Positions 5,823-47,288 of a stretch of DNA of 64,000 nucleotides are shown here, piece by piece. Location of the stretch: IMG/VR virus record IMGVR_UViG_3300041402_000314, positions 1 through 64,000 of that record. One strand, written 5' to 3'. A program made the position numbers and the translations under genes. The first letter of the stretch is position 1. Each line of letters opens with the position of its first letter. The notes below the pieces were generated by a model. It had not been told where the DNA came from. It worked only from the letters and a program-made list of their open reading frames with translations, and did not search any database.

Positions 5823-5928
5823 ACATTTATTTTAATGGGCGGTAAGTCTTGGCTCTTAACCGATGGCATATTCATACCTCCTCTTTAAAGTTGGTTGCAA
5901 ATGCACTTACCGCCCGATTTTATTTTTG

Positions 5929-6001
5929 TGCGTCTGGTGGGAGTCGAACCCACTACCGTTGGTTTTAGAAACCACGACTCTAGCCGTTGAGTTACAGACG
6001 C
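5929..6001 (-). tRNA. amber suppressor tRNA(CTA)
   Basis: Canonical spacing GCGTCTG-TA-ACTC-AACGGCTA-GAGT-C-GTGGT-TTCTAAA-ACCAA-CGGTA-GTGGG-TTCGACT-CCCAC-CAGACGC-A places CTA at positions 34-36; CCA not fully encoded. Confidence 0.85.
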
Positions 6002-12968: not shown

Positions 12969-13257
12969 TCATTTATCTCTATCGCGACATTTATCACGTC
13001 ATTTTGTCGCGATTATTATATTACCACAAGAAAAAATATTATCATAATTATAGAAATTAACCACATCAATCCATCTATTTCACCGAGCGTATCATCACAT
13101 ATCATTTCAAGTTCAGGCCACTCAATTTCTTCATCGGTCTTTTCCATAATTTTCCTATTTTATAGTTGGGTGGTGTCTCGCAACTTAGTCATCAGAGTGT
13201 CTTAATCGCTTTGTCTAACACTTTCTCACCCAAGCAGTTAGATTGCTTTATATTTTT

Positions 13258-13341
13258 TGGTAGGAGAGGAGGGATTTGAACCCTCAATCCCGAAGGCACT
13301 GGTTCCTAAGACCAGCGTGTATTCCGTTCCACCACCCTCCC
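13258..13341 (-). tRNA. tRNA-Leu(TAG)
   Basis: CTGGT-CTTAGGA-ACCAG, long variable arm, CCA. Confidence 0.93.
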
Positions 13342-13348
13342 ACATATT

Positions 13349-13645
13349 TTATATCTCTATCGGTTCTGGTAAATCAACATTATTCATAGATATCGCTTTA
13401 GCTTCACCAGTCTTTAAATTAACTTCGATCTCAAATGATATTTCGAATCCAGTACGGCAGAAATTATCAAGAGCCTTTCCACTTAAGCCCATTTCCTTGC
13501 CATTATTATAATTTCCATCTCCATCTGAATGAACAAAAAATGTAGTTTTAACTTTCTCTACTATTTCTAATTCACCACCACATTCTGGACAGAAATTAAA
13601 CTTCTCTACCTGTACAACTTCACAAAATCTACACCACTTAGACAT
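13349..13645 (-). CDS. zinc-ribbon hypothetical protein
   Basis: MSKWCRFC...FCPECG; ATG at 13645 after AGAGG RBS (the ORF-track start lies in tRNA-Leu). Confidence 0.55.
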   Translation of the reverse strand: MSKWCRFCEVVQVEKFNFCPECGGELEIVEKVKTTFFVHSDGDGNYNNGKEMGLSGKALDNFCRTGFEISFEIEVNLKTGEAKAISMNNVDLPEPIEI

Positions 13646-13667
13646 AATCAAACCTCTATTCAAATTT

Positions 13668-13757
13668 TGGTAGGAGTAGTCGGACTCGAACCGACAAGGG
13701 CGCATACGTCCCGCGAGATTTTAAGTCTCGTGTGTATACCAATTCCACCATACTCCC
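13668..13757 (-). tRNA. tRNA-Leu(TAA)
   Basis: CGAGA-CTTAAAA-TCTCG, long variable arm, CCA. Confidence 0.93.
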
Positions 13758-13771
13758 ACATATATTTTATT

Positions 13772-14023
13772 TTAATTAGCTGGTTCAGGCTTTTCTTGCC
13801 AATGGGTTACATTCCAACCCCAATTATATTCTTTCCATGTTTCAAAGTCAAACCATATTTGTTTATTGGCATCAAACCACAACATCATTACTTCTGGGTC
13901 ATCGTTTGGGTCTCTATGACCATCATCGAGTTCGACAGTGACAATATACTCACCAATAACATTCCAATGTTTATTCTTTTCTAAAGGCAATCTATCTTTA
14001 ACTGATATCCAATTACTTTCCAT
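13772..14023 (-). CDS. DUF551-like protein
   Basis: WISVKDRLP...VTHWQEKPEP. Confidence 0.8.
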   Translation of the reverse strand: MESNWISVKDRLPLEKNKHWNVIGEYIVTVELDDGHRDPNDDPEVMMLWFDANKQIWFDFETWKEYNWGWNVTHWQEKPEPAN

Positions 14024-14041
14024 TTCAATCCTTTAGTTTTA

Positions 14042-14116
14042 TGGTCAAGGCGGGGAGATTCGAACTCCCACTTCATGTTCCCAAAACATGGGTGCTACCA
14101 TTAACACTACGCCAAG
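14042..14116 (-). tRNA. tRNA-Pro(TGG)
   Basis: CATGT-TTTGGGA-ACATG; C1:G72, A73; two U:U mismatches at acceptor pairs 2 and 3. Confidence 0.85.
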
Positions 14117-14401
14117 AAATTTAGAGCTACTTTATCACGACATGATTAGAACCACCTGATCTGTTTCGATCAATTTCACTCAAGGTATCGTACTTGCTTC
14201 TACTGGTTAGGTTTCCGCACTCTTATACCTAAATCTTTTTAATTTAACAACTGAGGATGGTTAGTCCTCCCGATATAGCCTTCATTGATCACCATTCAAT
14301 CCATCAGCCAAGTTTTCTCTCTTCTTATCCGCTAAGATAAAAATACTCTTCTTTATACAGTCCTTACCGTACCATCGGCTATTGTCAAAAATCTTTTAAG
14401 T

Positions 14402-14486
14402 TGGCTCCAGCGGTAGGATTCGAACCTACATAGTCCTTTCGGACAGTGATTAACAGTCACCTGCATTGCCAATCTGCCACGCTGGA
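14402..14486 (-). tRNA. tRNA-Asn(GTT) with long variable arm
   Basis: TCCAGCG/CGCTGGA-G-CCA, loop CTGTTAA, extra GTCC-GAAA-GGAC arm. Confidence 0.88.
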
Positions 14487-14497
14487 ACATATATTTT

Positions 14498-14585
14498 TGG
14501 TCTCGCGATCTGGATTCAAACCAGAATCTCCTGTCAGTGTTTTGTCATATTTTGGCTCATCAGCCTTTAATTAAACTACCACGAG
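14498..14585 (-). ncRNA. tRNA-like RNA lacking a canonical anticodon arm
   Basis: CTCGTGG/TCGCGAG-A-CCA, TCTGG-TTTGAAT-CCAGA T-arm; central GGCT-GATG-AGCC hairpin plus an A-rich stretch. Confidence 0.65.
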
Positions 14586-14601
14586 ACATATTTTATATTT
14601 T

Positions 14602-14684
14602 TGGTTGTCCGAGTAGGAATTGAACCTACTAATCAGAGGCGGTTATACCGTCATTCCTCGTTTACCCACCACATGGGACGGACA
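14602..14684 (-). ncRNA. tRNA-like RNA with remodelled D and anticodon arms
   Basis: TGTCCG/CGGACA-A-CCA, GTAGG-TTCAATT-CCTAC T-arm; central GAGG/CCTC stem with bulge and CGGT-ATA-ACCG triloop. Confidence 0.65.
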
Positions 14685-14861
14685 ACATATTTTATTTTAT
14701 TTGCCAGTGTACAACAATTATACTCGCTAACTGGCTACCGAGAGTTTAGAGTCACGACAAGCAAAATAAAATCATATGAGCCAGCTTGTCGCGAATCTTT
14801 GCATTGTTGTCAACGAACGATTAATCAATGACGGCTCATATGCAGAAAAACTTTATATTTT

Positions 14862-14932
14862 TGGTGGGTGTGGATGGATTTGATACCATCATTTCTCTGT
14901 ACATAGTGCCTTCAATCTTAGACGACACACCC
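14862..14932 (-). ncRNA. tRNA-like RNA with truncated anticodon arm
   Basis: GGGTGTG/CACACCC-A-CCA, GTCT/AGGC D-stem, ~12 nt anticodon region, 8 nt T-loop TATCAAAT. Confidence 0.65.
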
Positions 14933-14945
14933 ATAACTTTTTATT

Positions 14946-15281
14946 TTAAGATGTAATTAGTTCAACTATCTTCTTAAAATAATCTTTGGATATAGAATCA
15001 AATCCTATTTCATCCATCCTTTCCACCAAATCATATTTATTAGTTGTTACATACTGAGCTAAATTACAGTGGAAGTCATCACAACCTTCACCGAACAATA
15101 CAAATCCCATTTGCCCGAACTCACCATCATCTATTCGGCTCATTATCTCGTATTTTAAATCAAACTCTTCTGGAAAGTCGATATATCTCTTTGTCGCATA
15201 TTTTATCGACATATTTTTCAATACTTCGAATGTATATCTTTTAAAAACATAATTCCAAATTCTATCAAATCTAGCGATCAT
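14946..15281 (-). CDS. hypothetical protein
   Basis: 111 aa; GAGGA RBS. Confidence 0.6.
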   Translation of the reverse strand: MIARFDRIWNYVFKRYTFEVLKNMSIKYATKRYIDFPEEFDLKYEIMSRIDDGEFGQMGFVLFGEGCDDFHCNLAQYVTTNKYDLVERMDEIGFDSISKDYFKKIVELITS

Positions 15282-15302
15282 AAACTTTCCTCAATAATAT
15301 TT

Positions 15303-15377
15303 TGGCAGGTCGCCAAGGACTTGAACCCTGATTCTCGGCATTGGAAACCGATGCTCTACCAATTGAACTAACGACCC
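15303..15377 (-). tRNA. tRNA-Trp(CCA)
   Basis: TCGGT-TTCCAAT-GCCGA; G73; CCA. Confidence 0.9.
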
Positions 15378-15386
15378 ACATTTTAA

Positions 15387-15578
15387 TTACTCTTCTCTTA
15401 CTATCTTAAATCCTTTTACCTTTTGTATATCTGGAATGAGGCTTTTGGAATATATTAATCTCCATGTTCCATCACCAACCTTTTCTATATTGATCATCTC
15501 AATTTTAGTATCGATCTCTACTACCTTGGAAAGCTCCAATACTTTCCCTATTCCTTCTATCTCAATGCTTCGCTTCAT
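15387..15578 (-). CDS. hypothetical protein
   Basis: 63 aa ORF in operon. Confidence 0.55.
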   Translation of the reverse strand: MKRSIEIEGIGKVLELSKVVEIDTKIEMINIEKVGDGTWRLIYSKSLIPDIQKVKGFKIVREE

Positions 15579-15777
15579 ATTCTTTTATCTTCCTAGCTAC
15601 TAGACTTGGTTTAACTGGATATTCGCCTATCGTATCTCCATATTCGCCATCTGATAATTCAAACAATATTTTCTTATCTTTCCAGACTTTTAACGTATGC
15701 CCTTCCCAATAATCTTGAATACTCCAAGCATATTTAACACCGTCTACAACAATATCCCTAAACTTCTTTTTAGCCAT
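15562..15777 (-). CDS. hypothetical protein
   Basis: MAKKKFRDIVVDGVKYAW; overlapping start/stop. Confidence 0.6.
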   Translation of the reverse strand: MAKKKFRDIVVDGVKYAWSIQDYWEGHTLKVWKDKKILFELSDGEYGDTIGEYPVKPSLVARKIKEYEAKH

Positions 15778-15919
15778 TCGGTATCTCTCCTGTTAGTAAC
15801 CAAAAATCATATTCATCTCTTGTCCAGCCTAACACATCCCAAAGAGTTCTATCATCTTCTTTATCTTCGTGCCATTTATCTATAGCTCCATCTATCTCTT
15901 TTTCGTCCGTAATTTTCAT
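15770..15919 (-). CDS. small hypothetical protein (possibly leaderless mRNA)
   Basis: ATG at 15919 lies 7 nt below the -10 box; WHE...LWDVLGWTRDEY. Confidence 0.55.
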   Translation of the reverse strand: MKITDEKEIDGAIDKWHEDKEDDRTLWDVLGWTRDEYDFWLLTGEIPNG

Positions 15920-15926
15920 AACACCT

Positions 15927-16002
15927 ATTATACCAAAATCAATCTCGTTTGTCAAGCATAAAAAAAGCCTCTTAAACATTTTATTTGTCTAAGAGGCTTT
16001 TT
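15927..16002 (-). terminator. intrinsic terminator fused to a sigma70 promoter
   Basis: AAAAAGCCTCTTA/TAAGAGGCTTTTTTT, then ATGC, then TTGACA-17-TATAAT. Confidence 0.85.
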
Positions 16003-16021
16003 AGAGTTATGTATATTATTA

Positions 16022-16168
16022 CTACTCTATATAGAACTCCCCCTTAGACGATACAAACCAATCCGCATTCAGCGCATTGAGATTTAGATGTAGGTCTGCA
16101 TTACATTGAATTACTGGCAATGTCGGTAAATTATTAAATTGTCTATTATCGTTTCTTCGAATGTTCAT
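16022..16168 (-). CDS. putative attenuator leader peptide 1 (48 aa, Asn-rich)
   Basis: Own promoter at 16195-16224, GAAGGGA RBS; MNIRRNDNRQFNNLPTLPVIQCNADLHLNLNALNADWFVSSKGEFYIE-TAG; its 3' end is complementary to the terminator 5' arm. Confidence 0.5.
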   Translation of the reverse strand: MNIRRNDNRQFNNLPTLPVIQCNADLHLNLNALNADWFVSSKGEFYIE

Positions 16169-16248
16169 TTTCCCTTCTCTAATTTTATATACACATTATA
16201 CCATAAAGGATATGTGTTTGTCAAGTCTTTGTTTTAAGTATTTATATA

Positions 16249-16440
16249 TCAAGAATTTTTCTTGTCCAGAACACCCCATGATGAACCACATGGTTTAGTC
16301 GGAAAACCACACTGCTTTAATTGACTAGCTACCCATTCAGCTATTTCTTCCCTAGTTTTATCTTTGAATCCACTAGGATACATATTCATAGTAATAGCTA
16401 TATCAAAACAAATATCCACAAGCTCTTGTTTTTCACTCAT
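16249..16440 (-). CDS. hypothetical protein
   Basis: 63 aa; GGAG RBS. Confidence 0.55.
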   Translation of the reverse strand: MSEKQELVDICFDIAITMNMYPSGFKDKTREEIAEWVASQLKQCGFPTKPCGSSWGVLDKKNS

Positions 16441-16815
16441 TTACAAACTCCTCCATCAATCTTCTAGCTTCTCTATGATCACAATTTAATGCTCTCTCGA
16501 TATCATAACGAAGTAATGCTTCTGGTTGACCAATAAATTCAAGAGCTAATTTACCTATGATCTCTCTAACAGTAAGATCGTATTTCTCTATTCTATCACT
16601 CAGTTCCATTATATACTCCTCCTATCCAATCAGGAGGTGCTAGAAATACACCCTTCCCATCATGATTCTTACATCCCTTATTAGAGCAGTAATACCACCA
16701 ATCCCATTCATTAGCATCTTTGAAATTAGTAAACTCATTATTACAACAAGCCATTACTACAGGCCATCCACAGTCTTTGCAGTAATTATGTTCATATATT
16801 CTAGCAGAAGAACTA

Positions 16816-17109
16816 CTATTCTTCGCTTTCACCGAACATCTCCTTGAATCTTTCGCCAGCTTCTCTTCCCGATCTACCTGCTTCAAGAAAGTCTTCGACT
16901 TGTTCCATAGTTTCCAATGTTACCACAGGATGTTCGCCCGACTCATTATCTATCAGGTTATTTAATCGTACTTCCATAGCCCCAGATTCCATTAGGATAT
17001 GGTATATGTCGCCTTTCGACTTCTCAAGCTCTTCCAAGAACTGTTCTCTAGGCATTGCCCTTAGTTCCTCAAAGACCACATCCATCGCTTTTCTCATTTT
17101 ATCATTCAT
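16816..17109 (-). CDS. hypothetical protein
   Basis: 97 aa acidic ORF. Confidence 0.55.
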   Translation of the reverse strand: MNDKMRKAMDVVFEELRAMPREQFLEELEKSKGDIYHILMESGAMEVRLNNLIDNESGEHPVVTLETMEQVEDFLEAGRSGREAGERFKEMFGESEE

Positions 17110-17112
17110 TAT

Positions 17113-17304
17113 CTAACCTGCTGTTGGGTCTTCGATATAACCATTTCTCGATGCAGTAATGAGTTGGCAAAAGAATCGTAGAGTCTCTTCATCCGCTATT
17201 TTTCGATAAAGACCAATAGCAACGAAATCATCTTCTGACCCTTCAATTTTATTGTATATTGATGTTAATTCATGAACATTTGTCATTTCAAACTCCTTAT
17301 TCAA
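17113..17304 (-). CDS. hypothetical protein
   Basis: AAGGAG RBS. Confidence 0.5.
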   Translation of the reverse strand: MNKEFEMTNVHELTSIYNKIEGSEDDFVAIGLYRKIADEETLRFFCQLITASRNGYIEDPTAG

Positions 17305-17492
17305 TATTTCTTTCCTTTAAGTATTTCATCAAACATGCTCATGAAATTAGTATCTTGAAGGTCGGGTGTTTTATGATGCTTCCTCATATTTGTACATGAA
17401 CTACATATATGAGAGATATTCTTCTTTAATTTAGCATCTCTAATTTCGCCTAAATATGTTCCACAATCAACACAATGGATATCTCTAGCCAC
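17301..17492 (-). CDS. small zinc-finger protein
   Basis: HCVDCG...ICSSC; GTG start after AGGAG. Confidence 0.55.
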   Translation of the reverse strand: MARDIHCVDCGTYLGEIRDAKLKKNISHICSSCTNMRKHHKTPDLQDTNFMSMFDEILKGKKY

Positions 17493-17515
17493 ATTAAACT
17501 CCTATTCAAATATTT

Positions 17516-17592
17516 TGGTGGGTCTGACTGGAATTGAACCAGCGTTTTTCTCCGTAAGAGGGAGCTACAAAGCCAACTTTTGTTACAAACCC
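17516..17592 (-). tRNA. tRNA-Lys(CTT)
   Basis: CTCC-CTCTTAC-GGAG; GGGTTTG/CAGACCC-A-CCA. Confidence 0.85.
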
Positions 17593-17605
17593 ATTTAATT
17601 TATTT

Positions 17606-17680
17606 TGGTGAGGCCACTCGGAACTGCCCCGAGATTGACTGGTTAAAAGCCAGATATTCTTCTAGTTGAATTATAGCCCC
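17606..17680 (-). tRNA. tRNA-Lys(TTT)
   Basis: Loop CTTTTAA; non-canonical T-loop GGCAGTT; CCA. Confidence 0.88.
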
Positions 17681-17692
17681 ATTAATTTATAT

Positions 17693-17779
17693 TGGTGGGA
17701 TTGGAAGGATTTGAACCTTCGATGCATCTCTGCGTTCGGTTATGAGCCGAGTGCCTTAACCAGACTAGGCAACAATCCC
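17693..17779 (-). tRNA. tRNA(CAT) Met/Ile2 with long variable arm
   Basis: Loop CTCATAA; extra GCA-GAGA-TGC arm; GGGATTG/CAATCCC-A-CCA. Confidence 0.87.
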
Positions 17780-17785
17780 AATATT

Positions 17786-18061
17786 TTATTTCCGATTTTC
17801 CTTTAATGCTTTTTCGAGAGCTTCTAAATATTTTTCAAAATTTCCAGTTAGCCCAATGCCTTCTCTTTGTCTAAGTCCAGTGATATGAGCTATGAAATCT
17901 TTTTCATCAACCTTTTCTGGAAGTTCTTCAAACGGAATTCCGTTTCTTTTATAATAAATGAAGCCTGATATCATCCACCAAGCATCACAGTCATCTTCGA
18001 AACAGGCATCATATTCGAAGAGCAATGCTTTATGTTTTTTATTAAATATTTCAGAATCCAT
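17786..18061 (-). CDS. hypothetical protein
   Basis: 91 aa, TAATG coupling to the upstream ORF. Confidence 0.55.
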   Translation of the reverse strand: MDSEIFNKKHKALLFEYDACFEDDCDAWWMISGFIYYKRNGIPFEELPEKVDEKDFIAHITGLRQREGIGLTGNFEKYLEALEKALKENRK

Positions 18062-19312: not shown

Positions 19313-19399
19313 TCGAAAATTCTCCGTTTTTAAGTATTTATACTTTCGGAAAAGTTTCGAACCTGTTTTAAAAGAGCAAGTTAAAAATCCTATTAATTT

Positions 19400-19933: not shown

Positions 19934-20006
19934 ATTATAACAAATTGTTTTCCAGAAGTCAAGCATAAAAAAAAGCCTTTCAGAAATTAAATTCTTGAAA
20001 GGCTTT
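19934..20006 (-). terminator. intrinsic terminator fused to a sigma70 promoter
   Basis: AAAGCCTTTCA/TGAAAGGCTTT + T8, then ATGC, then TTGACT-17-TATAAT. Confidence 0.85.
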
Positions 20007-20150: not shown

Positions 20151-20402
20151 TTCGTGTCCTTTTATTAGTGTTTCAAGTATTTATATCTTTAGAAAATTTT
20201 CTAGGGTCTCCGAAATTTATAGAGCAACCCCTACACTCATAATAAATTGTTTTATTGTGAGTTGTCAGACCCAAACTAATGATATCCACTCTACTTATAC
20301 TTCTATATCTATTATGTCCGCATATCGGACAAATAAAATCTTCCAATTTTTATACCCCTATTATACCACAACTGGTATCAGTTTGTCAAGTCTTATTATT
20401 TT

Positions 20403-30223: not shown

Positions 30224-30241
30224 GACAATCCTTATTTTAAG

Positions 30242-30249
30242 TATTTATA
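30242..30249 (-). promoter_or_regulatory. T4-type late promoter
   Basis: TATAAATA just upstream of an RBS. Confidence 0.7.
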
Positions 30250-38835: not shown

Positions 38836-38913
38836 ATTATTACTCTGACTTGACAAACCAATATTGCTTATGGTATAATAAAGACAACTTGGACAGAAAA
38901 GCCAATTAAAATT
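38836..38913 (+). repeat. 78 bp direct repeat copy 1, contains TTGACA-18-TATAAT
   Basis: Identical to 39361-39438 except TG/GT at two adjacent positions. Confidence 0.95.
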
Positions 38914-38926
38914 AGTTATAATTGAT

Positions 38927-39286
38927 TTATACTCTAGCTTTTATTTTAGTATTATCTAGTAAGTCACTGATTTGAATTATCCATAGATCATCTATTTTAT
39001 CTTCATCATAGAAACCATTAATGTCAAATGATTCAGAGATAAAATAGCCTATTAGGTTCTTACCATCATCACTATCATTGTTACGTATTATCTGTTCAAA
39101 GAGAAATGATTCATGAAATGATCTCCTAAGAACAACTATCCTATTGTAAATGGAATGTAGCTTATCTGTATTAGGACGTTTAATATATGAATTAGTTGTC
39201 CTCTTAATACTTCTAAACATCATATAATCTTCCTCAAAATCATCTGCTACCATACTTCTATAATTCATTAAAAATTTATCTTCCAT
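38927..39286 (-). CDS. T4-like conserved hypothetical protein
   Basis: FEEDYMMFRSIKR...YNRIVVLRRSF; GAGG RBS; flanked by the 78 bp repeats. Confidence 0.6.
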   Translation of the reverse strand: MEDKFLMNYRSMVADDFEEDYMMFRSIKRTTNSYIKRPNTDKLHSIYNRIVVLRRSFHESFLFEQIIRNNDSDDGKNLIGYFISESFDINGFYDEDKIDDLWIIQISDLLDNTKIKARV

Positions 39287-39360: not shown

Positions 39361-39438
39361 ATTATTACTCTGACTTGACAAACCAATATGTCTTATGGTA
39401 TAATAAAGACAACTTGGACAGAAAAGCCAATTAAAATT
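39361..39438 (+). repeat. 78 bp direct repeat copy 2, contains TTGACA-18-TATAAT
   Basis: See copy 1; located at the minus-to-plus strand switch. Confidence 0.95.
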
Positions 39439-39493
39439 GATTAAAACTAATATTAGACTAAAGAATACATACGGTAAATGAGATTACTTTAGT

Positions 39494-47001: not shown

Positions 47002-47259
47002 ATGAAAGATCATAGTAAGAGAGCTTTAAGAAGACATCACCTAGAGAGGCTTAAACGGAAACGTGCGTCATATTATTGGTGGTGGGCTGGTAGTGATGTT
47101 AAACGTCTTGGTAAGGTAGTAACCACACCTTGTATGTGTAGTTGCTGGATGTGCGGAAATCCTAGAAAGTATTATAAAGGACAATGGGGAGAAGAACGTA
47201 CTATTCAGGAAAGAAAGTATTTTCAGGAATCCATCGAAGAACTTTTGGAAGAAGTATAA
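47002..47259 (+). CDS. conserved hypothetical basic protein
   Basis: RALRRHH...TPCMCSCWMCGNPRK...TIQE. Confidence 0.65.
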   Translation: MKDHSKRALRRHHLERLKRKRASYYWWWAGSDVKRLGKVVTTPCMCSCWMCGNPRKYYKGQWGEERTIQERKYFQESIEELLEEV

Positions 47260-47288
47260 ATACTTAAAAACCTTACGGAGATAGATAT

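What the first reader, a model, noticed from the sequence alone, without database searches (positions are those of the whole stretch)
15927..16224. Third attenuator-like unit: Asn-rich leader ending in an amber codon
Seen: dedicated sigma70 promoter (16195-16224), RBS and a 48 aa leader with 9 Asn ending at TAG. GTCTAAGGGG near the leader end pairs over 10 bp (one G:U) with CCTCTTAGAC in the terminator 5' arm. The downstream same-strand unit includes tRNA-Trp, the tRNA mimics and the unusual tRNA-Asn. Inference: an Asn-sensing attenuator; the TAG stop could also make it responsive to the phage amber suppressor.
Basis: partly seen in the sequence, partly recalled or inferred. Interest (0 to 1): 0.68.

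Follow-up and report, generated by a model that had tools for sequence, protein, structure and literature searches.

The report
Phage mini-gene with switchable terminator
A conserved 48-codon gene of a T4-like marine-sediment phage has its own late and early promoters and ends in a terminator that the gene's last codons can pair with and block. It therefore looks like a ribosome-sensing attenuator in front of a tRNA operon, but the proposed asparagine and amber-codon sensing is not supported.

Summary
The 10-bp pairing between the ORF end (16049-16040) and the terminator 5' arm (15996-15987) exceeds chance. No shuffle in 500 matched its duplex energy, and it is the strongest case among 38 terminator-like hairpins in the 204-kb genome. 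The unit is a conserved cassette found in eight related metagenome contigs. It consists of a T4-type late-promoter motif, a perfect sigma70 promoter, a weak SD, a 43-50 codon ORF, a terminator and a second perfect promoter. The ORF is a real coding gene: indels in codons 1-43 are multiples of three, pN/pS is 0.1-0.5, and 14 non-Asn residues are invariant. The pairing sits at the homologous place in all relatives, but covariation support is weak. My best reading (about 0.5) is a PeSL-type small-gene cassette whose terminator depends on translation reaching the ORF end. Asn specificity is not shown: no Asn is invariant and the codons are not tandem. A consensus promoter follows the terminator, and in this genome TAG is followed in frame by TAA TAA, so amber suppression adds one residue. 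No RNA data exist.

The parts
16232..16246 (-). T4-type late-promoter-like motif (TATAAATA plus a conserved extension) just upstream of the early promoter
   Evidence: The same 15-mer occurs 8 times in the genome and 0 times in the reversed control. It precedes the portal, virion structural and baseplate hub genes. A gp55-like late sigma is encoded at 53465-53037. The motif is conserved in all eight relatives.
16195..16224 (-). Early promoter P1: TTGACA, 18 nt, TATAAT with TG extended -10
   Evidence: The -35 and -10 are invariant in relatives while the spacer varies.
16171..16179 (-). Purine-rich Shine-Dalgarno-like stretch, 2-3 nt before the ATG
   Evidence: The duplex with a canonical anti-SD is -5.6 kcal/mol, weaker than about 79% of genes. 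It is conserved as a purine-rich block in relatives.
16022..16168 (-). 48-codon ORF (P0001) ending in TAG at 16024-16022. The core is codons 1-43 and the tail is variable.
   Evidence: Indels of 3, 3 and 9 nt occur in the core and 1-2 nt G-run changes after Gly43. pN/pS is 0.1-0.49. There are 14 invariant residues.
16016..16021 (-). Two further in-frame TAA stops directly after the TAG
   Evidence: Read-through extension is 0 codons.
16040..16049 (-). Antiterminator strand (segment 2), inside codons 40-43
16003..16028 (-). Small hairpin between segment 2 and the terminator. It contains the stop codons.
   Evidence: A hairpin of different sequence lies at the same place in L009, L010 and L011.
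15962..16002 (-). Intrinsic terminator: 5' arm 16002-15987 (segment 3 = 15996-15987), loop 15986-15978, 3' arm 15977-15962. The T run continues to 15960.
   Evidence: In relatives 96.6% of cells are paired, with three compensatory pairs.
15927..15955 (-). Early promoter P2 (TTGACA, 17 nt, TATAAT). Its -35 lies 6 nt after the terminator stem (4 nt after the T run); the next ATG (15919) comes 7 nt after its -10.
   Evidence: It is conserved in all relatives. The 13-nt T-run/-35 junction recurs at 19970.

Best explanation
This is a self-contained small-gene cassette in the hyperplastic early/tRNA region of a distant T4-like phage. It consists of a late promoter, a strong early promoter, a weak SD, a 43-50 codon gene, an intrinsic terminator, and directly after it the early promoter of the next operon. 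That last pair is a PeSL-type terminator/promoter composite. The gene encodes a conserved peptide of unknown role. I infer that the terminator depends on translation. In naked nascent RNA the last conserved codons (16049-16040) pair with the terminator's 5' arm before the 3' arm is made, which would favour read-through. A ribosome that has reached the end of the ORF lies on or next to that strand, so the terminator forms. Efficient coupled translation would therefore give termination, and a lagging or stalled ribosome would give read-through into the operon that starts with tRNA-Trp and tRNA-Asn. This would matter mainly when P2 is silent, for example for transcripts from the late promoter. 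Shown here: the parts, their conservation, coding selection, and the excess complementarity. Inferred: that the pairing changes termination, and what signal slows the ribosome.
For: The parts are documented. The cassette is the best conserved block (82-91% identity) in contigs L002-L006. Its flanks differ on both sides, with breakpoints at about 16260 and at the -10 of P2. A cold-seep contig keeps both borders but has 185 other letters in place of the interior. The same architecture is present in three more distant relatives, L009-L011. Coding evidence is the in-frame indels, pN/pS of 0.1-0.49 and 14 invariant residues. The pairing forms with probability about 0.99 in the nascent RNA lacking the 3' arm. 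The minimum-energy fold keeps it until the RNA is 95 nt long in a 104-nt local model, and the estimated refolding barrier is 11-12 kcal/mol. Against chance, none of 500 shuffles matched the duplex energy, and z is -3.46, the best of 38 hairpins. The homologous codons are the best partner of the arm in every relative. Duplex energies are -11.2 to -17.0 kcal/mol and z is -2.9 to -4.7, except in L004/L005. Across relatives 92.4% of cells are paired, against 24-54% when the partner is slid. One G:C to A:U double change occurs, and one pair appears as G:U, G:C or A:U. RNAalifold on the nascent part predicts exactly this helix. An X4 contig variant gives 10 Watson-Crick pairs. The stop codon lies 9 nt after the strand in 6 of 9 sequences. 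The order cassette, P2, 0-4 small ORFs, tRNA-Trp, tRNA-Asn is conserved. The late-promoter reading rests.
Against: There are no RNA or termination data: every run that holds the sequence is DNA. P2 is a perfect promoter right after the terminator, so read-through is not needed for downstream expression. Covariation is thin. The RNAalifold covariation term is about 0, only one double change comes from one lineage, and a G-rich strand tolerates C/U changes in the arm. The strand lies in coding sequence under selection, so its conservation is not independent evidence. In L004/L005 two synonymous changes weaken the pairing to -11.7 kcal/mol with a bulge (z about -1.9). G-run frameshifts move the stop from 9 to 15 nt (window) or 21 nt (L002) after the strand, so that spacing is not tightly held. 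In whole-transcript folds of L002-L006 the arm pairs with the SD region instead. The host is unknown. The strong SDs and extended -10 promoters would fit a host in which transcription and translation are poorly coupled; that link comes from my own knowledge and was not tested.
Confidence: 0.5

Rival explanations
1. This is an ordinary PeSL-type ORFan cassette. The terminator simply ends the upstream early operon and P2 restarts transcription. The complementarity between the ORF end and the terminator arm has no regulatory role and persists because those codons are under protein selection.
For: The terminator-plus-promoter composite with the same junction recurs at 20006/19962 and 29783. Indel breakpoints between relatives fall at the cassette borders. 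This matches the published description of PeSLs. P2 is conserved. Covariation is weak, and the pairing has eroded in L004/L005.
Against: The complementarity is a clear outlier: 0 of 500 shuffles, and the best of 38 hairpins. It is an outlier again in L009-L011, where the surrounding non-coding sequence has diverged. The arm changes in L010/L011 are matched by the coding strand.
Confidence: 0.3
2. An Asn-sensing leader peptide stalls ribosomes at hungry Asn codons, the antiterminator is freed, and read-through raises the downstream tRNA-Asn.
For: The ORF has 9 Asn in 48 codons against a 5.5% genome mean, and the family has 5-9 Asn per peptide. Two or three Asn lie in codons 29-34, where a stalled ribosome would leave 16049-16040 free (geometry inferred). 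tRNA-Trp and tRNA-Asn are the first tRNAs downstream in the window, in L002 and in L009.
Against: No Asn column is invariant. Four of the window's nine Asn are not shared, and the only tandem pair is lost in four relatives (P0002, P0003, P0005, P0006). The Asn excess is not significant genome-wide, with an expectation of 0.42 such genes. The peptide is conserved at non-Asn residues with pN/pS below 0.5, unlike classical leaders. P2 intervenes. The tRNA-Asn is 1.5 kb away, among 17 downstream tRNAs.
Confidence: 0.12
3. The conserved peptide is an arrest peptide. It stalls its own ribosome in response to some ligand or host state and thereby sets the terminator switch. The known parallels are ermK-type and TnaC-type control.
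For: The peptide is conserved at the amino-acid level, including W37 and F38 shortly before the stop. No autonomous fold is predicted, with pLDDT of 57. The stop position and the TAG are conserved in most relatives.
Against: The peptide has no similarity to any known arrest peptide or family. The tail between F38 and the stop is variable and has been frameshifted. There is no direct test.
Confidence: 0.06
4. The unit is a non-coding small RNA, or a switch read by the phage amber suppressor tRNA.
For: It is a promoter-to-terminator unit of about 230 nt. A tRNA with anticodon CUA is encoded at 6001-5928. The stop is TAG in 8 of 9 family members, and in some relatives read-through would carry ribosomes into the terminator.
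Against: The in-frame indels and pN/pS below 0.5 show that it codes for protein. No Rfam family reaches its threshold. In this genome TAG is followed by TAA TAA, so the extension is 0 codons, and L002 ends in TAA.
Confidence: 0.02

Closest known systems
PeSL cassettes (promoter-early stem-loop) of T4-type phages (Arbiol et al. 2010, PMC2839356; Comeau et al. 2014, PMC4122927)
   Same: Both have a consensus sigma70-type early promoter with an AT-rich upstream region and an adjacent stem-loop terminator. Both flank small ORFans in the hyperplastic region of a T4-like genome. Both are repeated in the genome, and insertions, deletions and replacements between relatives break at these elements.
   Different: The stem-loop here is a classical U-tailed terminator rather than a polyG/polyC stem. 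A late-promoter motif sits in front of P1. The described PeSLs have no pairing between the upstream ORF and the stem-loop. Mini-circle formation could not be tested.
Ribosome-mediated transcription attenuators of amino-acid operons (trp, his, leu, thr, pheST leaders; named from my own knowledge)
   Same: Both have a short translated ORF with an SD, a strand at the ORF end that competes with the terminator 3' arm for the 5' arm, and a stop codon placed so that a terminating ribosome blocks the antiterminator.
   Different: The ORF is 43-50 codons long and conserved as a peptide. It has no tandem run of one codon and no conserved 1:2 pause hairpin. A strong promoter lies between the terminator and the downstream genes. 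Those genes are small ORFs and tRNAs, not a biosynthetic operon. The element belongs to a phage.
Morons of lambdoid phages (independent promoter-gene-terminator units; named from my own knowledge)
   Same: Both are autonomous transcription units carrying one small accessory gene, inserted between other genes and variably present among relatives.
   Different: This one lies in a virulent T4-like genome rather than a prophage. It is expressed from phage-cycle promoters, both early and late.

Membership tests
Ribosome-mediated attenuator (trp/his type) | Short leader ORF with a start codon and ribosome binding site, translated | tested here: met
   The ORF has an ATG and a weak SD. In-frame indels and pN/pS of 0.1-0.49 indicate translation.
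Ribosome-mediated attenuator (trp/his type) | Mutually exclusive antiterminator and terminator pairings that share the terminator 5' arm | tested here: met
   The 10-bp alternative helix was matched in duplex energy by 0 of 500 shuffles and is conserved in place in 8 relatives.
Ribosome-mediated attenuator (trp/his type) | Clustered (usually tandem) regulatory codons of one amino acid, conserved among relatives | tested here: not met
   The 9 Asn are scattered with one tandem pair, which is lost in four relatives (P0002, P0003, P0005, P0006). No Asn column is invariant.
Ribosome-mediated attenuator (trp/his type) | Downstream genes depend on read-through, with no promoter between terminator and genes | tested here: not met
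   The perfect promoter at 15955-15927 is conserved in all relatives.
Ribosome-mediated attenuator (trp/his type) | Upstream pause hairpin (1:2) that synchronises RNA polymerase and ribosome | tested here: inconclusive
   A predicted hairpin ahead of 16049 lies in a stretch that carries a 9-nt deletion in L004-L006.
Ribosome-mediated attenuator (trp/his type) | Termination efficiency changes with translation of the leader | not testable with these tools
   No RNA runs hold the sequence.
PeSL composite of T4-type phages | Sigma70-consensus early promoter with an AT-rich upstream region | tested here: met
PeSL composite of T4-type phages | Stable stem-loop next to or overlapping the promoter; upstream of the -35 is one of the five described positions | tested here: met
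   The terminator at 16002-15962 ends 6 nt before the -35 of P2. P1 has no stem-loop of its own.
PeSL composite of T4-type phages | Repeated in the hyperplastic regions of a T4-like genome, flanking ORFans | tested here: met
   T4-like core genes are present. Composites lie at 15999, 20006 and 29783 with a shared junction. The ORF has no family match.
PeSL composite of T4-type phages | Indels and replacements between related phages break at these elements | tested here: met
PeSL composite of T4-type phages | Recombination between flanking copies gives mini-circles | not testable with these tools
   This needs inverse PCR on phage DNA.

The most novel reading that the evidence does not exclude
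This would be a phage-encoded ribosome-sensing attenuator. When translation lags, through shortage of Asn- or Trp-tRNA or through arrest by the conserved peptide itself, transcripts from the late and early promoters read through the terminator into the phage's own tRNA-Trp/tRNA-Asn operon. The phage would thus tune its tRNA supply to translational demand, above all late in infection when sigma70-type promoters such as P2 are shut off.
Probability: 0.15. Interest if true: 0.8.

Novelty: new variant of a known kind. Interest (0 to 1): 0.5.

Why it matters
Phage tRNA clusters are common, but how their expression is controlled is largely unknown. Leader-peptide attenuation is known for bacterial amino-acid and synthetase operons, not for phage tRNA operons; a library search for such a case found nothing relevant. 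If the pairing works as a switch, it would be a feedback from ribosome speed to phage tRNA supply, built into a mobile PeSL-type cassette. If it does not, the locus is still a clean example of PeSL-like modular shuffling. It lies far outside the enterobacterial and vibrio T4-like phages where PeSLs were described, and it carries tandem late and early promoters on a 48-codon gene.

Tried and rejected
The following led nowhere.
- PHROGs on the ORF gave no family; of its seven neighbours only three had weak or functionless matches.
- The Rfam scan of 13000-18000 gave only tRNAs above threshold. The sRNA hits over the unit score 28 and 27 bits against thresholds of 80 and 55, so they are chance.
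- Phage GenBank blastn found no close relative.
- Peptide-pattern scans of IMG/VR and of JGI metagenomes found no relative. L001, found with a neighbouring gene, was not used further.
- The ESM Atlas gave no usable hit.
- AlphaFold2 on the 8-sequence alignment gave pLDDT of 57 and no fold, so no fold search was made.
- The sequencing-run search found DNA metagenomes only (marine sediment, cold seep), so expression, 3' ends and read-through could not be read. I laid contigs of four runs on 421 bases only to look for variants.
- One script that held typed motifs came back unrun. I redid it with motifs cut from the window by coordinates.

I rejected the following ideas.
- The pairing is not a genome-wide repeated motif. 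The 7-mer occurs 18 times in scattered places and the 10-mers are essentially unique.
- Segment 2 is not a duplicated piece of the terminator, because similarity stops at the 10-11 paired bases.
- TAG is not recoded in this genome. It ends 50 of 406 genes, including the DNA polymerase gene, and read-through extensions are mostly short.

I named no other genetic code. P0006 had been called with TAG read as Gln by its source, so I cut it at the TAG. No complex prediction was run because no binding claim is made.

Full report
Setting. The window is the first 64 kb of a single 204,149-bp virus contig with 35% G+C. It encodes a family B DNA polymerase about 35% identical to those of T4-like cyanophages. 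It also encodes a UvsW-like helicase, an SbcC-like ATPase, an RNA ligase and a gp55-like late sigma at 53465-53037. It is therefore a distant T4-like phage. The only run that holds most of the stretch is a marine-sediment metagenome, and partial relatives lie in cold-seep and sediment runs. No RNA run holds it. The region 1-39,000 reads on the minus strand and is packed with 28 tRNA genes and small ORFs.

Observation.
- The promoter at 16224-16195 is a perfect TTGACA / 18 nt / TATAAT with TG before the -10.
- A purine-rich SD-like stretch lies at 16179-16171.
- The ATG is at 16168, and the ORF has 48 codons with 9 Asn.
- The stop is TAG at 16024-16022.
- The terminator at 16002-15962 has a 17-pair stem followed by a T run.
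- The 10 bases 16049-16040 pair with 15996-15987 with one G:U.

Such perfect promoters occur 15 times in the window against 0.13 expected, and 32 times in the genome. The TAG is followed in frame by TAA TAA. The lower coordinate of the finding, 15927, is the -10 of a second perfect promoter, P2 at 15955-15927, whose -35 lies 6 nt after the terminator stem and 4 nt after the T run.

Chance. The pairing is more than chance. One of 500 dinucleotide shuffles of the upstream RNA reached such a helix. None reached its duplex energy of -15.5 kcal/mol; the shuffles averaged -8.8 +/- 2.0. Among 38 terminator-like hairpins of the genome treated the same way, this one has the strongest upstream complement, with z of -3.46 and 0 of 200 shuffles. 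The short words involved are not a repeated motif of the genome. The Asn excess is less convincing. Asn makes up 5.5% of residues in 406 crude gene calls, and this ORF is the richest. However, the binomial expectation of one such 48-codon gene in the genome is 0.42.

Relatives. The word search found four close homologues at 77-86% identity. A profile search of 1.8 billion representatives found three more distant ones. All come from sediment-type metagenome contigs, L002-L006 and L009-L011. Scans of IMG/VR and JGI found none. In every contig the whole layout recurs:
- a TATAAATA motif with a conserved extension;
- the -35 and -10 of P1;
- a purine-rich SD;
- an ORF of 43-50 codons;
- a stop codon;
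- the terminator;
- P2.

The block 16260-15927 is the best conserved part of the neighbourhood, at 82-91% identity. The genes on either side differ from contig to contig. The 63-codon gene upstream is absent in L002 and L005, and the 49- and 71-codon genes downstream are absent or replaced in L002, L004 and L006. One cold-seep contig keeps 16260-16229 and 15970-15950 but has 185 other letters in place of the 258-nt interior. Terminator-plus-promoter composites with the same T-run/-35 junction also lie at 20006/19962 and 29783. This is the behaviour described for PeSL elements of T4-type phages. Those are sigma70-consensus early promoters with an AT-rich upstream region and an adjacent stem-loop terminator. 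They flank ORFans in hyperplastic regions and serve as recombination points.

The late promoter. The 35 conserved bases upstream of P1 contain TATAAATA, the T4 late-promoter consensus (that identity is from my own knowledge). The 15-mer at 16246-16232 occurs eight times in the genome and never in the reversed control. It stands 20-35 nt before the SD of the portal, a virion structural and a baseplate hub gene. A gp55 homologue is present. The small gene is therefore probably transcribed both early and late.

The ORF is a real gene. Within codons 1-43 all indels among the six close sequences are 3, 3 and 9 nt long. After Gly43 a G run varies by 1-2 nt, so the tails and stops differ. Pairwise pN/pS is 0.10-0.49 in every comparison. 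Across eight peptides 14 residues are invariant (M1 I3 R9 L14 P15 T16 L17 Q21 C22 D25 L26 L28 W37 F38), and none of them is Asn. Asn counts are 9 in the window and 5-7 elsewhere. The peptide has no family match, no paralogue and no confident fold, with pLDDT of 57. This is not the pattern of a classical leader peptide, in which only the regulatory codons matter.

The alternative pairing. In a fold of the nascent transcript that stops before the terminator 3' arm, the 16049-16040 / 15996-15987 helix forms with probability about 0.99. It closes over a small hairpin that holds the stop codons. In a local model the minimum-energy fold keeps this helix until 95 of 104 nt are available. The direct-path barrier to the terminator fold is 11-12 kcal/mol. 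These are model results, not measurements.

In every relative the best partner of the terminator 5' arm inside the ORF is the homologous Ser/Thr-Lys-Gly/Glu/Arg codons. Duplex energies are -14.8 to -17.0 kcal/mol in L002, L003 and L006, and -15.2, -13.2 and -11.2 in L009, L010 and L011. The z values run from -2.9 to -4.7. On the eight-sequence alignment 92.4% of cells pair, against 24-54% when the partner is slid. One pair changes on both sides (G:C to A:U in L010/L011), and one pair occurs as G:U, G:C and A:U. Nine of 500 shuffles reach the observed values. The terminator itself scores 96.6% with three double changes. RNAalifold on the nascent part predicts exactly this helix, but its covariation term is about zero. 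A contig of run X4 carries a variant that makes all ten pairs Watson-Crick. The stop codon lies 9 nt behind the strand in six of nine sequences, 12 nt in L010, 15 nt in the window and 21 nt in L002. A terminating ribosome would therefore cover part of the strand or occupy the loop that the helix must close. That geometry is inferred from standard ribosome footprints.

Weaknesses of the switch reading.
- The strand is coding sequence under selection, so its conservation is not independent evidence.
- A G-rich strand pairs with C or U, so arm changes need no compensation.
- In L004/L005 two synonymous changes cut the pairing to -11.7 kcal/mol with a bulge.
- The G-run frameshifts show that the stop spacing is not tightly held.
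- In whole-transcript folds of L002-L006 the arm pairs with the SD region instead.
- P2, conserved everywhere, makes read-through unnecessary whenever sigma70-type promoters are active.

The switch would matter chiefly for late-promoter transcripts. That step is inference.

The Asn and amber claims. Downstream order is conserved. tRNA-Trp and then tRNA-Asn are the first tRNAs after the cassette in the window, in L002 and in L009, where they follow P2 within 100-200 nt. Two or three Asn codons lie in codons 29-34, where a stalled ribosome would leave the strand free. This keeps an Asn or Trp link possible. It is a one-in-ten kind of coincidence among 28 tRNAs, and the Asn codons are neither tandem nor invariant.

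TAG ends 50 of 406 genes here, including the DNA polymerase gene, and read-through extensions are mostly short. TAG is therefore an ordinary stop despite the CUA tRNA at 6001-5928. For this ORF suppression adds one residue before TAA TAA. L002 ends in TAA. In some relatives a suppressed TAG would carry ribosomes into the terminator. I note this but do not build on it.

Verdict. The unit is best filed as a PeSL-type small-gene cassette with tandem late and early promoters. Its terminator carries a conserved, translation-sensitive-looking alternative pairing. I give about 0.5 to the pairing being a working switch, 0.3 to its being without function, about 0.12 to Asn-specific sensing, and very little to an amber link or a non-coding RNA. 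No known family describes this combination, and a library search for phage attenuators of tRNA genes found nothing relevant.

Noticed in passing
window 20389-19934 (minus) and 29922-29716 (minus): There are two sister units. One is a 38-codon ORF (20150-20034) with its own TATAAATA motif at 20185, a terminator at 20006-19972 and a promoter at 19962-19934. The other is a 36-codon ORF (29922-29812) with a terminator at 29783-29754 followed by a promoter. The first has a 9-nt complement of its terminator arm in its last codons (z -2.1); the second does not stand out (z -0.95).
   Followed up: partly
window 15927-15917 and 19934-19924 (minus): The ATG of the next gene lies exactly 7 nt after the -10 of P2 and of the 19962 promoter. 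Transcripts from these promoters would therefore be leaderless or nearly so. Relatives L002, L010 and L011 have a normal leader with an SD instead.
   Followed up: no
window 14402-14486 (minus); L009 550-613: The tRNA-Asn (GTT) is 85 nt long, with a long variable arm and an encoded CCA end. That is unusual for Asn. A cut-off copy of the same type follows tRNA-Trp in L009, whereas L002 has a 75-nt tRNA-Asn.
   Followed up: partly
window 5928-6001 (minus): This is a tRNA with anticodon CUA (an amber suppressor, labelled Pyl by ARAGORN). It resembles none of the other 27 tRNAs. TAG nevertheless behaves as an ordinary stop genome-wide.
   Followed up: partly
window 17609-17680 (minus): Rfam finds a tRNA here (44.8 bits) that ARAGORN did not list, between tRNA-Met-like 17693-17779 and tRNA-Lys 17516-17592.
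   Followed up: no
window 38850-38950, 39375-39475 (plus); genome 124470-124570: These are near-identical copies of a perfect promoter followed by the same roughly 35-nt transcribed leader. Their function is unknown.
   Followed up: no
window 14500-14900 (minus): This stretch is conserved in L002 (82-88% identity) and has tRNA-like T-arm signatures, but there is no tRNA call from ARAGORN or Rfam.
   Followed up: no
L009 147-341: The source's gene caller read this 613-bp contig with TAG as Gln and so extended the homologous ORF through the terminator to 64 codons. Under the standard code it ends at TAG after 46 codons.
   Followed up: yes
window 16232-16246, 19328-19342, 30235-30249 (minus), 47255-47269 (plus); genome 107020, 129371, 163346, 184846: This 15-nt extended TATAAATA motif is the likely late promoter of the phage. 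It is also present before several small genes inside the early/tRNA region.
   Followed up: partly
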